Source: Basidiobolus meristosporus CBS 931.73 (taxonomy: Eukaryota > Fungi > Basidiobolomycota). Taken from it: a stretch of 64,000 nt of DNA. The position numbers and the translations under genes were made by a program. The stretch is from NCBI GenBank assembly GCA_002104905.1, contig MCFE01000139.1, positions 62,001 to 126,000 on the forward strand, given 5' to 3'. Shown one piece after another: positions 58,177 through 64,000 of the stretch (its first letter is position 1; each line of letters opens with the position of its first letter). Below the pieces are notes generated by a model. It saw nothing but the letters and a program-made list of their open reading frames with translations. It ran no database searches and had not been told where the DNA came from.

Positions 58177-60765
58177 TTAGGGTAGACGGCAGGGCTTGAT
58201 GTTCCAGATGGAGTCGGCATATTCCTTGATGGCACGGTCCGAGGAGAACTTCGCCATTCCTGCTGTGCACATAATTGACATCTTGGCCCAGCTCTCCTTG
58301 TTCTTGTAGGCGACATCAACCCTGGCCTGAGCTTCCAAGTACGTGCGGAAGTCCACCGAGACGAGGTAGACATCTCCGCCGTTCTGAAGAGTGTACAGCA
58401 GGGGGGCGAAGATGTTGGGGTCCCCGAAGACGCCGGAATAGATGATGTCCAGGACATTCTGGAGTTTAGGATCCATGGGCAGCTTGCGATATCTGATGGC
58501 GTGTCGGAGGTCATCCACCTCGTGAGCAAGAACCCCAAAAGTGAAGATGTTCTCGTCGCCGATCTCCTCATTGATCTCGATGTTGGCGCCATCGACGGTG
58601 CCGAGGATGATACCTCCGTTCAACACGAATTTCATGTTGGAGGTACCGGAAGCTTCAGTACCTGCAGTGGAGATATGCTGGGAGATGTCACTGGCAGGGA
58701 TGATGACTTCAGCAATGGAGACGTTGTAATCAGGAATAAAGACCACCTTCAACAAGTCGCCGATCTCCTTGTCGGCATTGACCACATCCGCAACACTATT
58801 GATGAGCTTGATGACCAGCTTGGCCACATAGTATCCAGGGGCAGCCTTTCCGCCAAAGATGACCACTCGGGAGACTTGCTTCTCTCTCTCGGCCTTGCTC
58901 ATGGCTTTAAGAGAGGAGTAGCGGTAGATCACACTGAGGATGTTCATGTACTGACGTTTGTACTCGTGGATACGCTTAACCTGGACATCGAACATCGCCT
59001 CCGGGTTCACCTTCACACCACAGCGCTCCTCAATATGTTTGGCCAATCTCTCCTTGTTCTTCTTCTTGACATCCATCCATTCCTTCTGGAACGCTTTGTC
59101 GCTGGCGAACTTCTTCAGCTTGGCAAGTTCGGTGAGTTTAGTGGTCCATTGATCACTGCCAAGCTTTTTGGTGATGAGGTCGCTGAGAAGGGGGTTACAT
59201 TGATGCAACCATCTTCTCGGGGTGACCCCGTTGGTCTTGTTCTCGAAACGCTTGGGCCCGTAGAAGTCGACAAAGTCCTTGAAGATGGTCTTTTGAATCA
59301 AGTCCGAGTGGAGCGCCGCCACTCCGTTTACCCGGTGGGAACCGACGATGGCGAGATGGGCCATGCGGACGTTCTGCGGCTGGGATTCCTCAATGATGGA
59401 GATGCGGTTTAGGAGGTCTCGGTCGCCTGGCTTTGTTTTCTCAACCTTCTGCAGGAAGAACAAATTAAGGTCGTAGATGATCATCATGTGTCTGGGTAGC
59501 ACGTGCTCCAACATGGGTACCGACCATTTCTCCATGGCTTCAGGAAGAATGGTATGGTTGGTGAAGGCGAAGGTACGGGTTACGATGTCCCAGGCCTCAT
59601 CCCACTCCAGACCTTCCTCATCGATGAGGACACGTTGCAACTCCGGAATCCCGAGCGTTGGGTGAGTGTCGTTAAGCTGGATGGCCACCTGCTCAGGGAA
59701 TTCCTTCCAGGGGCGCTTGGTCTTCTTGAAACGACGGATGATGTCGTAGAGAGTGGCACACACGAAGAAGTACTCCTGCTTGAGACGCAGCTCCTTTCCA
59801 ACCATGTGGTTATCGTTGGGATACAACACCGAGGTGATATTCTCGGCGGATTTCTGCTCACCAACGGATTTATCGTAGTTGCCCTCATTGAAACTCTCGA
59901 GATCGAAGCTCTTCTTGGGCTTGCTGCTCCACAGACGGATGTTGATGCAATTCTTGGTATCGTATCCGGGGATAGGGATGTCGTAGGCGACAGCCTGAAC
60001 GATTTGTCCACCCTCCCAGGTGTACTTCGTGTTCCCTTTGCTGTCGTAGTTCTTATCAACATACCCGTAGAACCGGACCTCCACCGAAATGTCTAGGCGA
60101 GGAAGCTCCCAGGGGTTTCCATAGTTGAGCCAGTAATCTGGAACCTCGGTTTGGAATCCGTCGACGATCTTCTGTTGGAACATGCCGTAGTTATACCGGA
60201 TTCCGTATCCCCAGGCTGGGTAATCCAGAGTAGCTAAGGAGTCCATGTAGCAGGCGGCTAGACGCCCGAGACCACCGTTTCCGAGGGCCGCGTCTTTCTC
60301 CTCCTCGATGAGATCTTCCATGGTGAAGCCGAGCTGCTTAACACCTTTATTGTAGTTTTCCTTCAAGCCAAGTGCCAACAGGGCGTTGTCCAGGGAACGA
60401 CCGATCAGGAATTCCATAGAGAGGTAGTACACCCGCTTGGGATCGTTGGCAGTATGGTATTCTTGAGTCTCGTTCCAACGTTTGATTAATCGATCGCGGA
60501 CCGAGTGCGCAGTGGCAAGATACCCGGCAAAATCGTCCACATTGAATGGGGTTCTGGCCAAGGTGGTGGCCATATGACGAGCGATGGAGGTTTGGATGGA
60601 GGTGACATCTGGCTCATCAAGCTCGATCAGTTTCTGCCATAGCTTGGTCTCCTCTTCAGTGAACTTCTTTCTGGTATCTTGGTCCTTCGATTGGATCGTA
60701 GGAAGAGGAAGAACTGTCGAGCTTCTTCTTCTGGGTCTGGGTCTTTCGGGAGCACTGGTGTTCAT
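58177..60765 (-). CDS. GPH1: Glycogen phosphorylase (GT35), fungal type, 862 aa, intronless
   Basis: [53 protein letters not shown]-lysine motif [10 protein letters not shown]. Confidence 0.98.
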
Positions 60766-60847: not shown

Positions 60848-62937
60848 AAGCAAGTACATACGTCAACATCAAGCTAGCTGAACCATCTGGGATGCGTAAC
60901 CCTGTGCTAATCAAGTAATGGATCCTGTAAAATATTCACGTTCTACTGCGAAATTTACCATGATGTCCAAAAGAATGCTACCGTCGATAGAATCCAGTAT
61001 ATTTATCGATACCGGATGTACCCACTCATCAACAATACCCAGATTTCAGTATTGCCTCCCTTCATAGACCAGGATTCCAGAGCCCCGACAACCTCTGACC
61101 GAATTAAATGATGGAGAAATACTGTTACGTAACCACCTTTGACTGAGATGCGTCCGTCCATACTTCCTGGAGGTTGGCCGTGGAGGTTCCTTTTAAAGGA
61201 CCAATTAGGTCGGAGATGGGTTGTGAGGCAGCAGTGCACAATCCGCGGCCATTTCTCGTCTGGCTTCGCATGTGAGGTTAGGACCGAGGGTATCCTGGGG
61301 TGGGGCTTTGATCGTTGCTGGCAGCGCTTGATATGCTGTGAGACCACATCTCGCCACGGGACAAGTGCGCAAGGGCGAGTTGGGGCTATCGATGGTAGAC
61401 ACACACTGGTTGGTAGGATCGGAGTCATCGATGATCAGATATTGAACTTACCAGTCCAGTCATACAGAGGATGAAGAATAAGTAAGACACCTTCATCCAG
61501 TGGGTAGATGCCGCACCTAGCCGATGAAAGTGCGTACAAATTGAAAATCCCAGAACCCATCAGGCTTCGAGTGGCTGAAATGAGTGATCGGATGACAAGC
61601 CCCAGTACCTACTACAAGGCTGCCTGGTGGGCACACCGCTCTTGACTTTCCTTCGACGATTGCTTTGCGAGTTTCGACACGACAAGTCAAGGGAGAGTGT
61701 TACTTGAGGTTAGATGATGGAGGATAGGATACAGAACCGCCGTTGATCTGAATCTCGATTCCGCCAATCACTGATCAAGCCTGGCCATACTGGAATCACT
61801 ACGCTATTTGGCTCCATACCAACTTGATCTCGGATTTGACGCATTGCAGATGATTACACACACCGTCCAAATCCTCTTCCATAAATATGGCATTGATGGG
61901 AGCTACATCCCCACAGGGTCAGACTGATTCACTTGGATTTGATAAGAGGTTGGTACACGGCATTCTGTGGACGAGTAGATCTGGGGCTATGCCAGATGCT
62001 ACTCTCTAAGCCACGACTCTGAGTGTTCCCTTCCAACGCAGTGAAACCATAATAGGGACTTCGTTACTGTTGATTCCTCGCGCTTCGTGCCACCACTAAT
62101 AGGCAAATTGACTCTTATCTGATAAGGGCATTGTTGAGGGGAGGTATGTTGTGAGTGTCAGTGGGAATGGGAATGTGAATGTGAATGTGGACAAACCTTG
62201 ACTGTTACCCAAATCAGTGTCCAGTGTATTGCTCTGATTTATTCGGCATGTTCAATCAAACTGTTGACCAAACTCGACGCTGGATTTGGCAACGTTGACG
62301 TCACTTTCGAGACATTAGATTAACTCCATGGTGACTCCAACATACCACCTGTCTGCTGTGAGCAACAGAGGACTCTTCATATAAGGTTCCAGAGCCGAAG
62401 CCTTCGTGTGTGTGCATTACCCCGTGAGTATTGAGTTGTTAAGCGAGGGAGAGATCTACAAGCCATGCGCCAAAGACCGACGGGGCCTTCCGCATGCTGC
62501 GAACCATGCTGGAGATATCCCTGCTATGTGTGAATGGAAGGGCCGATGAAGATAATGATGATCTTTAGCTATTGGCACGCAAGATCAGTTGCGATATAAC
62601 CCCGATCAAGCCATAGCATGCCTCTTCGGGGAGAGTTGGCTTAAATGCCGACGATTCTACTCGAATGGCATGGGTCAGAGCTTCGAAGAAAACATGGAGA
62701 CAGCAGCGTATTATTTGTTGGTACTTTAGCCACCCTGATACAAGCGACACTTGGATTCATCACCCTTAGGTGACATGATATTACTGTTCATATCACCGGG
62801 TTTCAACTGATCACTACATAGGCAAACTCCCTCCCCAGCATTACGACTAATACAATGGGTTTATTCGGGTGTGAATCATTTGCTAGACTGCCATTACAAA
62901 AGCAAATCGCTGGAAGCCGAAAAGAACTGGTGGTTCT

Positions 62938-64000
62938 TCACGACGTGTGGGTATTTGTACACTGGAACACAAGACATCTGTTGATATCGTGATGATCCTT
63001 ATGGAACTTGATAAAGTCCCAATCATTAAACACATCCTTTACTTGGTCAGCTGTGCCGCTCCCGGCTTCCAAGACGAGGTAGCCATTTGCCGAAATGATC
63101 TTTTCTCTGACTGAGGCATGTAACATTTGATACGACGTTAAGCTGGTCTCACCACAAAACAGTGCCTCATGGGGCTCGAACTCCGAAACCCCAAAATCCA
63201 GCTTTCTGGCTTTGTCCTCCGGTATGTACGGGGGATTGCATAGTACAATATCGAAGCTCTGCTTCAGCTCTTCGATCTCGTCCAACTTCGAGAAGTCTCC
63301 GGTCACAAAGTTCACTCGGTCGACCATATCAAGCGATTCGGCATTTTTCTTGGCAACCTCGAGCGCCTCTGGGCTGATGTCAACTCCGCACCCGGTGGAA
63401 TCAGCAATCTTCTTCATGCACGACAGCAGAATGCATCCTGAGCCAGTCCCAAGATCAAGAATCTTGATTGGAGTCTCTCTATCCTTCATTGACTCGGCTA
63501 TCTCCACTGCCGCAGCCACCAAGGCCTCGGTGCTTTGACGAGGAATTAGCGTTGCGGGTGTAACATGGAATCGTAGGCCACAGAATTCCTATTTGAGGCG
63601 CTTGCAAGTTAGCAAGGACCGGTGTAGGAGGAGAGGAGGAAGATGTTACCTTGTAGCCAAGCAGATAGGCCACTGGCATCTCCGTTCCAGGATCATACTC
63701 TACTACATCAACATTGTTTTTCTGCAGCTCCTCTATATACTGAAGCTTTCGCTTTTCGAAGAAGCGAACCTCTCGTTGACGCAAAGCCTAGATATCAGGG
63801 ATTAGCAAGGTCGGTCGTTTCCTCCACCGCGAATACACGGGCTCTCCCACTTTACCTCGAATTTGTTGGGCTCTTCTCTGAAAAACCGCATCGGCTCCCC
63901 GGATACTGGGTGCGGGAACTCCAGCGCAAGTAGGGATAGAAACATCCCCTTATCTCTAGAGGTTTTTAGCTGCTTCGTGTATGAATTATTGCCAACCACA
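62938..64000 (-). CDS. 3' part of a spliced gene: RluA-family pseudouridine-synthase C-terminus fused to a HemK/PrmC N5-glutamine methyltransferase (exons >64000-63856, 63787-63650, 63588-62938)
   Basis: Phase-0 introns 63855-63788 (GTAAAG..GCTAAT..TAG) and 63649-63589 (GTAACA..GCTAAC..TAG); spliced product ...VGNNSY..MFLSLLALEFPHPVSGEPMRF..PNKFE|ALRQ...PVAYLLGYK|EFCGLRFHVTPATLIPRQSTE..DLGTGSGC..NPPY..EP..AL. Confidence 0.85.

What the first reader, a model, noticed from the sequence alone, without database searches (positions are those of the whole stretch)
62938..64000. Pseudouridine-synthase-like domain spliced in frame to a PrmC/HemK glutamine methyltransferase
Seen: two canonical phase-0 introns with CTAAY branch sites join three exons into one stop-free frame. 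The last exon is a PrmC catalytic domain (LIPRxxTE, DLGTGSG, NPPY). The upstream exon (VVGNNSY...GMFLSLLALEFPHPVSGEPMRF..EP.KF) matches the C-terminal VGDxxY...LHAxxLxFxHPxTGExxxFxxxxP motifs of RluA/RluC/RluD enzymes. Only the PVAYLLG tail of the usual PrmC N-domain remains, after a ~35-aa charged helical linker. Established: RluD-type enzymes modify LSU rRNA helix 69, PrmC methylates the GGQ motif of release factors, and both affect translation termination. Inference: one protein may couple rRNA modification to release-factor methylation, perhaps in mitochondria. I do not know whether this architecture has been described. The catalytic HRLD motif lies outside the window, and motif III has N where D is usual.
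Basis: partly seen in the sequence, partly recalled or inferred. Interest (0 to 1): 0.8.

Follow-up and report, generated by a model that had tools for sequence, protein, structure and literature searches.

The report
RluD-like domain fused to release-factor methyltransferase
A real and widely conserved single gene in this Basidiobolus fungus joins an RNA-binding, pseudouridine-synthase-like module that lacks the usual catalytic aspartate to a fully intact release-factor glutamine methyltransferase; the combination sits unnoticed in databases and has not been described.

Summary
On the minus strand, two phase-0 GT..AG introns (63855-63788 and 63649-63589) join three exons into one frame. This is exactly the 546-aa gene model annotated for this contig (P0001, 100% identity).

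Three results show the fusion is real:
- The Coemansia orthologue is one uninterrupted 597-codon ORF.
- In Basidiobolus ranarum the linker exon differs mainly at third codon positions, while both introns diverge in sequence and length.
- About 30 representative clusters share the architecture: chytrids, Zoopagomycota, Mucoromycota, an amoebozoan and a marine protist.

The domains are S4 plus an RluD-type fold (profile against E. coli RluD, E 3e-22; structure Z about 21), a 27-residue helix, and a PrmC catalytic domain (Z 28.6 to E. coli PrmC). All PrmC motifs are invariant, but the PrmC N-domain is missing.

HRLD reads YELE here. The catalytic Asp position is Glu in 12 of 17 orthologues, and no member keeps both the Arg and the Asp of HRLD. 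Coupled pseudouridylation is therefore doubtful. I think the module more likely binds RNA or docks on the ribosome. Fungal members show no N-terminal mitochondrial presequence. No RNA run was listed and I found no paper on this architecture. I rate it a new variant of known kinds, of moderate interest.

The parts
63856..63999 (-). In-window 3' part of exon 2 (the exon runs on to window-equivalent 64281). It encodes the last 48 residues of the RluD-like domain, P0001 residues 237-284, ending EPNKFE.
   Evidence: It matches the C-terminal end of the RluC/RluA profiles. It is part of the profile match to RluD and of the structural match covering model residues 82-298.
63788..63855 (-). Intron, 68 nt, phase 0, GTAAAG...CTAAT...TAG. 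This is the junction that creates the fusion.
   Evidence: Against B. ranarum it is 47% identical with a 6-nt length difference, while the flanking exons are 74-82% identical.
63650..63787 (-). Exon 3, 46 codons. It encodes the charged linker helix and the start of the PrmC hairpin (PVAYLLGYK).
   Evidence: AF2 predicts a helix at residues 281-307. Against B. ranarum, codon positions 1/2/3 are identical at 42/45/26 of 46, which marks it as coding.
63589..63649 (-). Intron, 61 nt, phase 0, GTAACA...CTAAC...ATAG, inside the conserved PrmC hairpin motif.
   Evidence: Splicing restores PVAYLLGYK|EFCGLRFHV. Against B. ranarum it is 30% identical, and the B. ranarum intron is 12 nt longer.
62938..63588 (-). 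Last exon, 216 codons plus TGA: the PrmC/HemK catalytic domain (LIPRQSTE, LDLGTGSG, NPPY, EP).
   Evidence: TIGR03534 188.3 bits and TIGR00536 146.9 bits. Pfam MTS and Methyltransf_31. Structural match to E. coli PrmC 2b3t_A: Z 28.6, rmsd 3.1, 242 residues aligned.

Best explanation
The window holds the 3' 57% of a four-exon gene. Its start lies at window-equivalent 64778, outside the window.

Shown: the gene encodes one 546-aa protein with this layout:
- an S4 RNA-binding domain (about residues 6-75);
- an RluD-type pseudouridine-synthase fold (about 76-284);
- a single long helix (281-307);
- a PrmC-type glutamine-N5 methyltransferase catalytic domain (322-546).
The S4/RluD-like module takes the place of the five-helix N-domain that bacterial PrmC uses to hold its release-factor substrate.

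Inferred:
- The methyltransferase half is active and still methylates the GGQ glutamine of class-I release-factor-type proteins of bacterial descent, that is, the mitochondrial ones. All its catalytic and SAM-binding motifs are invariant across the family, and it is 40-48% identical to ordinary PrmCs.
- The RluD-like half is kept as a folded RNA-binding module, under the same constraint as the methyltransferase.
- This half probably no longer makes pseudouridine, because HRLD reads YELE.
- It most likely docks the enzyme on large-subunit rRNA, in an RluD-like way on helix 69 or on an assembly intermediate, or it serves as a new substrate-recruiting domain.
- Chytrids and an amoebozoan keep Asp, so the ancestral fusion may have been truly bifunctional.
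For: That it is one gene:
- The Coemansia orthologue P0046 is a single 597-codon ORF that translates directly from the DNA.
- B. ranarum has an 83% identical 547-aa orthologue with the same start and junctions.
- The exon/intron divergence pattern against B. ranarum fits two real introns.

Domains:
- The N-terminal profile hits RluD at 3e-22 across S4 plus catalytic domain.
- The AF2 model has pLDDT 88.5 and pTM 0.75.
- Foldseek and VIA place PrmC and RluD/RluC/RluA at the top.

Methyltransferase intact: N448 P449 P450 Y451, D375 G377 T378 G379, P346 R347 and E468 P469 are invariant in 17 orthologues.

PrmC N-domain lost: fusion members carry no PF17827, whereas nearly all ordinary PrmC hits do.

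PUS active site altered: (Glu 12, Asp 3, Gly 1, Gln 1; Arg of HRLD in 3 of 17).

Module still constrained: identity between the two Basidiobolus species is 87% for S4, 80% for the PUS-like part, 92% for the linker and 82% for the methyltransferase.

Precedents for non-catalytic RluA-family proteins on mitoribosomes:
- RPUSD3 is regarded as a pseudoenzyme (PMC12710931).
- mt-LAF3 acts as a scaffold (bioRxiv 10.1101/2023.02.23.529727). It also appears among the structural matches.

Functional link between the two parent enzymes: loss of rluD or of prmC in E. coli K-12 gives severe defects, and both are relieved by the RF2-B variant (PMC5373646).
Against: - No RNA evidence exists for this genome (none listed).
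- No biochemical data exist for any member.
- The acidic residue at the catalytic position is retained (Glu or Asp in 15 of 17), and its partner Arg (R227, the HQIR Arg) is invariant. The pocket is therefore under selection, and catalysis with Glu is not excluded.
- Fungal members have no room for a cleavable mitochondrial presequence, so the compartment, and with it the substrate, is uncertain.
- I could not test whether these genomes also have a stand-alone Mtq1.
Confidence: 0.6

Rival explanations
1. The protein is a truly bifunctional enzyme. The RluD-like half makes pseudouridine in large-subunit rRNA, with Glu serving as the catalytic acid, and the PrmC half methylates release factors.
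For: An acidic residue is kept at the catalytic position in 15 of 17 members, and the partner Arg is invariant. The module is as constrained as the methyltransferase. Chytrids and Planoprotostelium keep Asp. rluD and prmC are functionally linked in E. coli.
Against: HRLD reads YELE here. No member has both the Arg and the Asp. One member has Gly and one Gln at the catalytic position. The KxY Tyr and the GD Asp are not conserved. The Pfam PF00849 score is below its threshold (21-22 vs 26.8 bits). From memory, not checked here: Asp-to-Glu mutants of TruA were reported inactive.
Confidence: 0.2
2. The methyltransferase has changed substrate. Carried to the ribosome by the S4/RluD-like module, it methylates a ribosomal protein glutamine (as the PrmC paralogue PrmB does on uL3), a ribosome-resident GGQ protein, or an rRNA base, rather than free release factors.
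For: The release-factor-binding N-domain of PrmC is gone. NPPY methyltransferases of the same fold act on rRNA, for example RsmC and RlmG, which appear in the structural list. The PrmB profile also matches (TIGR03533, 111.7 bits). There is no presequence in the fungal members.
Against: The PrmC profile scores far higher than PrmB (188.3 vs 111.7 bits). The closest structures are PrmC/HemK at Z 27-29, against 19 or less for rRNA methyltransferases. The PrmC-specific hairpin and the LIPR..TE and EP motifs are invariant.
Confidence: 0.15
3. The fusion is an artefact. Two neighbouring genes, a pseudouridine-synthase gene ending just inside the first intron and a short methyltransferase gene starting at the Met of MPVAYLLG, were wrongly joined.
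For: Read through the first intron, the upstream frame ends at a TAA 17 codons after the exon. Exon 3 contains an ATG 10 codons before its end. No RNA run was available.
Against: The Coemansia orthologue is a single intron-less ORF. The same architecture is seen in about 30 representative clusters from independent annotations. The 36 codons of exon 3 upstream of that ATG are conserved, with a third-position substitution pattern, while the intron is not. The linker motif EPxKF...RxRE is conserved across phyla.
Confidence: 0.03

Closest known systems
PrmC/HemK (E. coli), Mtq1 (yeast mitochondria), HEMK1 (human mitochondria): release-factor GGQ glutamine-N5 methyltransferases
   Same: The catalytic domain, the hairpin motif (PxAYxxGxxxFxxxxFxV), LIPRxxTE, the DxGTGSG SAM site, NPPY and EP. 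It is 28-32% identical to the solved PrmC/HemK structures, with Z 27-29, and 40-48% identical to metagenomic and alphaproteobacterial PrmCs.
   Different: The five-helix N-domain (PF17827) is absent. It is replaced by about 280 residues of S4 plus RluD-like fold and one long helix. The TIGR03534 score on the last exon alone is just under its equivalog cutoff (188.3 vs 199.1 bits).
RluD (E. coli 23S rRNA helix 69 pseudouridine synthase; S4 plus RluA-family catalytic domain)
   Same: The same two-domain layout and fold. The profile match is 3e-22 over RluD residues 4-251, and structural Z is about 21. The KPxG motif and the motif-III Arg are conserved.
   Different: HRLD is YELE. The catalytic Asp is Glu, the flipping Arg is lost and the GD Asp is lost. 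Pfam PF00849 scores below threshold. The protein is fused C-terminally to a methyltransferase.
Non-catalytic RluA-family proteins of mitochondria: human RPUSD3 and Trypanosoma mt-LAF3
   Same: RluA-family folds with an impaired HRLD motif that act on, or bind, mitochondrial large-subunit rRNA without needing catalysis. mt-LAF3 chains are among the sequence and structure matches.
   Different: Those are stand-alone proteins, and mt-LAF3 keeps the Asp (HNLD). This family carries Glu and is covalently joined to an active-looking enzyme.
Bifunctional PrmC/TrmB (NCBIfam NF002421) and yeast Rib2/Pus8 (RluA-family synthase fused to a deaminase; from memory)
   Same: They are precedents for PrmC fused to an RNA-modification enzyme and for an RluA-family domain fused to an unrelated enzyme. 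The name 'Bifunctional methyltransferase' given to the Smittium and Zancudomyces members probably comes from the former.
   Different: The partner domains and the domain order differ. NF002421 matches only the PrmC part here (101 bits vs a cutoff of 567).

Membership tests
PrmC/HemK release-factor glutamine methyltransferase | NPPY substrate-amide binding motif | tested here: met
   NPPY is at P0001 residues 448-451 and is invariant in 17 orthologues.
PrmC/HemK release-factor glutamine methyltransferase | SAM-binding motif I and the PrmC hairpin with LIPRxxTE | tested here: met
   LDLGTGSG, PVAYLLGYKEFCGLRFHV and LIPRQSTE are present. D375, G377, T378, G379, P346 and R347 are invariant.
PrmC/HemK release-factor glutamine methyltransferase | Score above curated family thresholds | tested here: inconclusive
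   On the last exon alone, TIGR00536 (HemK family) scores 146.9 bits against a cutoff of 115.5, which is met. TIGR03534 (PrmC equivalog) scores 188.3 bits against 199.1, which is just missed, because profile positions 1-53 (the N-domain) have no counterpart.
PrmC/HemK release-factor glutamine methyltransferase | N-terminal five-helix domain (PF17827, PrmC_N) that contacts the release factor | tested here: not met
   P0001 and the other fusion members have no PF17827 hit, whereas nearly all ordinary PrmC hits do. The structural alignment to PrmC starts only at model residue 288.
PrmC/HemK release-factor glutamine methyltransferase | Fold of the catalytic domain closest to solved PrmC/HemK | tested here: met
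   2b3t_A: Z 28.6, rmsd 3.1, 242 residues aligned. T. maritima HemK: Z 27-28. The next family scores Z 21.8 or less.
PrmC/HemK release-factor glutamine methyltransferase | Methylates the Gln of GGQ in class-I release factors | not testable with these tools
   This needs an enzyme assay or mass spectrometry.
RluA-family pseudouridine synthase, RluD type | S4 domain followed by the RluA-family catalytic fold | tested here: met
   The family profile aligns to RluD residues 4-251 at E 3e-22, and ribosomal protein S4 is hit at 5e-3. Pfam S4 is found in 3 of 17 members. Structural Z is 20.7-20.9.
RluA-family pseudouridine synthase, RluD type | Catalytic Asp in the HRLD motif | tested here: not met
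   P0001 residues 133-136 read YELE, so the position holds Glu. Across 17 orthologues it is Glu in 12, Asp in 3, Gly in 1 and Gln in 1.
RluA-family pseudouridine synthase, RluD type | Uridine-flipping Arg of HRLD | tested here: not met
   It is Glu in P0001. Arg is kept in 3 of 17 members, never together with Asp.
RluA-family pseudouridine synthase, RluD type | Conserved basic residue of motif III (the HQIR Arg) | tested here: met
   R227 is invariant in 17 of 17.
RluA-family pseudouridine synthase, RluD type | Pfam PF00849 gathering score | tested here: not met
   P0001 scores 21.2-22.1 bits against 26.8. Ten of 17 members match at E of 0.01 or better.
Mitochondrial Mtq1/HEMK1 orthologue | N-terminal mitochondrial targeting presequence | tested here: inconclusive
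   No predictor was available. P0001 starts MDEQ and the S4 strand starts at residue 6. Fungal members have 1-57 residues before S4, most with acidic residues. Only Planoprotostelium has a long extension of about 100 residues with a presequence-like start.

The most novel reading that the evidence does not exclude
An ancient eukaryotic enzyme family, found in early-diverging fungi, an amoebozoan and a marine protist and apparently not in Dikarya or animals. In it the substrate-holding domain of the release-factor methyltransferase was replaced by a helix-69-type rRNA-recognition module derived from RluD. GGQ methylation would then be carried out on, or licensed by, the mitochondrial large ribosomal subunit. 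This would be a physical 'Rosetta-stone' link between two modifications known only genetically to converge on termination. The module's conserved Glu-Arg pocket would act as a reader of a flipped-out uridine, or as an unprecedented Glu-dependent synthase.
Probability: 0.3. Interest if true: 0.75.

Novelty: new variant of a known kind. Interest (0 to 1): 0.55.

Why it matters
RluD (helix 69 pseudouridines) and PrmC (GGQ methylation) are known from E. coli K-12 genetics to converge on release-factor function. A natural, conserved fusion of the two folds is independent evidence that they act on the same step. It also offers a tractable protein for asking where and when organellar release factors are methylated.

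The family shows an enzyme half drifting towards a binding module: Asp in chytrids, Glu in the zygomycete lineages. It also shows how PrmC can trade its substrate-binding domain for another.

There is a practical annotation point. The pseudouridine-synthase-like half scores below Pfam's threshold in most members, so databases list these proteins as plain methyltransferases, and several genomes carry split or over-merged models.

Tried and rejected
- RNA evidence: the look-up of sequencing runs listed no RNA run for this stretch. Comparative DNA evidence was used in its place.
- Upstream exon alone: the 48-aa piece gave no Pfam hit. It gave only weak NCBIfam and PDB matches, so it could not settle the question.
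- ESM Atlas: a feature search with the last exon returned only ordinary bacterial PrmC clusters, which says nothing about the fusion.
- Literature: five searches found no description of the architecture (HemK plus pseudouridine synthase plus fusion; Mtq1 plus Pus5; Mtq1 plus pseudouridine synthase; the assembly accession; RluD plus RF2 plus PrmC).
- Asp-to-Glu mutant: the TruB paper I consulted for such a mutant does not contain one. My statement that Asp-to-Glu inactivates TruA is from memory.
- Earlier scan notes: nothing on PrmC, HemK or pseudouridine in this genome.
- Spliced protein: I did not submit the spliced protein as typed letters. The identical stored model P0001 was used instead.
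- Stand-alone Mtq1: whether these fungi also have one could not be decided.
- Two-gene reading: rejected on the Coemansia single ORF and the codon-position pattern.

Full report
**What is in the window.** The feature is on the minus strand. Reading 64000 to 62700 in reverse complement and translating the pieces gives the following.
- An exon part 63999-63856 of 48 codons, starting VVGNNSY and ending EPNKFE.
- A 68-nt intron 63855-63788: GTAAAG, CTAAT 17 nt before the TAG acceptor.
- An exon 63787-63650 of 46 codons: a charged stretch, then PVAYLLGYK.
- A 61-nt intron 63649-63589: GTAACA, CTAAC, ATAG.
- A last exon 63588-62938 of 216 codons plus TGA.

Both introns are phase 0 and the joined frame has no stop. 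The second intron is beyond doubt, because splicing restores the PrmC hairpin motif. The first intron is the one that creates the fusion. Read through it, the upstream frame would stop after 17 more codons. The frame of the middle exon opens exactly at the acceptor TAG.

**What the pieces are.** The last exon scores 188.3 bits on the PrmC equivalog TIGR03534 (profile positions 54-252 of 253). It scores 146.9 bits on the HemK family model, above its cutoff, with the usual methyltransferase Pfam hits. The 48-aa upstream piece is too short to score on its own. It has no Pfam hit and E 0.0043 and 0.066 on the RluC and RluA-subfamily models, although placed at their C-terminal ends. Against RluC in the PDB it reaches only E 0.6.

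**Extending beyond the window.** No RNA run was listed. An exhaustive HMMER search with the last exon returned a 546-aa protein, P0001, that is 100% identical over residues 331-546.

P0001 is the annotated model on contig MCFE01000139.1 of assembly GCA_002104905.1 (locus L001). The window's reverse complement is identical to L001 6779-7841. The model has four exons (L001 6001-6426, 6498-6923, 6992-7129, 7191-7841), all junctions in phase 0.

An 83% identical 547-aa orthologue comes from Basidiobolus ranarum, so the window is from a Basidiobolus. From memory, this assembly is B. meristosporus CBS 931.73; I could not verify that.

**Is the fusion real?** Three independent lines say yes.
1. The Coemansia orthologue P0046 (597 aa) is encoded by one uninterrupted ORF. 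Locus L002 3001-4794 is 598 codons and translates directly to the protein.
2. The DNA alignment with B. ranarum shows 82% identity in the linker exon, with codon positions 1/2/3 identical at 42/45/26 of 46. The two introns drop to 47% and 30% identity and differ in length. This is the signature of coding exons separated by true introns at these exact boundaries.
3. The N-terminal region of P0001 is shared by about 30 of the 150 best representative clusters, and by 70 of 298 fetched proteins when a family profile is used. The taxa include:
   - chytrids: Quaeritorhiza, Borealophlyctis, Nowakowskiella, Polychytrium, Dinochytrium;
   - Zoopagomycota: Coemansia, Smittium, Zancudomyces, Dimargaris, Dispira, Tieghemiomyces, Massospora, Basidiobolus;
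   - Mucoromycota: Phycomyces, Calcarisporiella, Dissophora, Actinomortierella, Lunasporangiospora, Benniella;
   - the amoebozoan Planoprotostelium;
   - a marine protist transcriptome.

**The N-terminal module.** A profile of the first 234-382 residues of 17 orthologues (A2) hits E. coli RluD at 3e-22, over RluD residues 4-251. That span covers the S4 domain and most of the catalytic domain. Further hits are another RluD, RluA, RluC, RPUSD4, RPUSD1 and the trypanosomatid mitoribosome assembly factors of the mt-LAF3 type.

An AlphaFold2 model of P0001 built on the 17-sequence alignment is confident (pLDDT 88.5, pTM 0.75). Foldseek puts E. coli PrmC in complex with RF1 (2b3t_A, 3e-20) and E. 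coli RluD (2ist, 1e-19) on top.

VIA-align gives the following:
- PrmC: Z 28.6, model 288-541 on chain 8-276.
- RluD catalytic domain: Z 20.9, model 82-298.
- Full-length RluD: Z 20.7, model 4-303.

Between the two domains lies a single helix at residues 281-307. No fusion member has the PrmC N-domain PF17827, whereas nearly all ordinary PrmC hits have it.

In the profile alignment the RluD catalytic motif HRLD lines up with YELE in P0001, residues 133-136. This lies outside the window, at window-equivalent 64382-64371.

| Active-site position | State in 17 orthologues |
|---|---|
| Catalytic Asp of HRLD | Glu 12, Asp 3 (two chytrids and Planoprotostelium), Gly 1, Gln 1 |
| Uridine-flipping Arg of HRLD | kept in 3 of 17, never together with Asp |
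| Tyr of the KxY motif | kept in 9 of 17 |
| Asp of the GD motif | kept in 1 of 17 |

Further members repeat the pattern: Glu in Mortierellomycotina and in the marine protist (YRLE), Asp in a third chytrid, Gly in one more. Pfam PF00849 stays below its gathering score for P0001 (21-22 vs 26.8 bits). This is why most of these proteins appear in databases as plain methyltransferases; only a few carry a precomputed PF00849.

The module is not decaying, however. An acidic residue is kept in 15 of 17, and its usual partner, the motif-III Arg (R227), is invariant. Between the two Basidiobolus species, identity is 87% for S4, 80% for the PUS-like part, 92% for the linker and 82% for the methyltransferase.

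Non-catalytic RluA-family proteins that work on mitochondrial large-subunit rRNA are known. RPUSD3 lacks the Asp and is regarded as a pseudoenzyme (PMC12710931). T. brucei mt-LAF3 has HNLD, and its Asp is dispensable, so it is read as a scaffold (bioRxiv 10.1101/2023.02.23.529727). I therefore take the module as an RNA-binding or ribosome-docking domain (about 60%). I leave about 20% for real catalysis with Glu.

**The methyltransferase half.** All PrmC hallmarks are invariant in the family: P346 R347 of LIPR, D375 G377 T378 G379, N448 P449 P450 Y451, and E468 P469. The nearest ordinary-length relatives are 40-48% identical PrmCs, and those that carry a name are mainly alphaproteobacterial. 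This fits descent from the mitochondrial endosymbiont, that is, the Mtq1/HEMK1 lineage.

PrmB (uL3 glutamine methyltransferase) scores much lower, at 111.7 bits. rRNA methyltransferases of the same fold lie at Z 19 or less. I infer that the half still methylates the GGQ glutamine. A switch to a ribosome-resident substrate is a minor rival.

**Location.** Homology points to mitochondria, but P0001 starts MDEQ and the S4 strand begins at residue 6. B. ranarum has the same start. Fungal members have 1-57 residues before S4, most of them with acidic residues. Only Planoprotostelium carries an extension of about 100 residues with a presequence-like beginning. No predictor was available, so this point stays open.

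**Comparison with what is known.** The two parent families are well studied. In E. coli K-12, loss of rluD or of prmC gives severe defects that are both relieved by the RF2-B variant (PMC5373646). The fusion is therefore a plausible 'Rosetta stone'. Precedents exist for PrmC fused to TrmB (NF002421) and, from memory, for an RluA-family domain fused to a deaminase (yeast Rib2/Pus8). I found no paper on an RluD-like/PrmC fusion.

**Verdict.** This is a new variant of known kinds, already present but unrecognised in public annotation. Interest is moderate, at 0.55.

Noticed in passing
window 58177-60765 (-): An intron-less 862-aa ORF for glycogen phosphorylase (PF00343 in the annotated locus). 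It is the next gene downstream, separated from the methyltransferase stop by about 2.2 kb that holds no long ORF.
   Followed up: partly
L001 1-5050 (window-equivalent beyond 64000); L007 1-308: The divergent upstream neighbour is a class-V-type myosin (Myosin_head, DIL). The same neighbour is kept in B. ranarum, so local synteny is conserved. About 950 bp of shared 5' intergenic DNA lies between the two start codons.
   Followed up: no
window 62150-62195 (+): A short imperfect hexamer microsatellite (GGGAATG/TGAATG units) lies in the intergenic region downstream of the gene.
   Followed up: no
L002 2296-4794; proteins P0156, P0157, P0161: In several Coemansia assemblies the upstream 200-aa BCAS2 gene is merged with the fusion gene into 779-aa models. 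This is an annotation artefact, and it explains why BCAS2-sized proteins sit in the same 90% cluster.
   Followed up: partly
Phycomyces proteins P0175, P0176, P0178: One Phycomyces annotation has a single 638-aa model. A newer one splits it into a 138-aa 'RNA-binding S4 domain-containing protein' and a 392-aa methyltransferase. This family is often mis-modelled.
   Followed up: no
L004, L005, L006; proteins P0104, P0170, P0201, P0217: Intron-less fusion genes from unidentified eukaryotes turn up in an ENA metagenome or Logan assembly and in a marine protist transcriptome. They carry long low-complexity inserts in the linker. Their taxa were not identified.
   Followed up: partly
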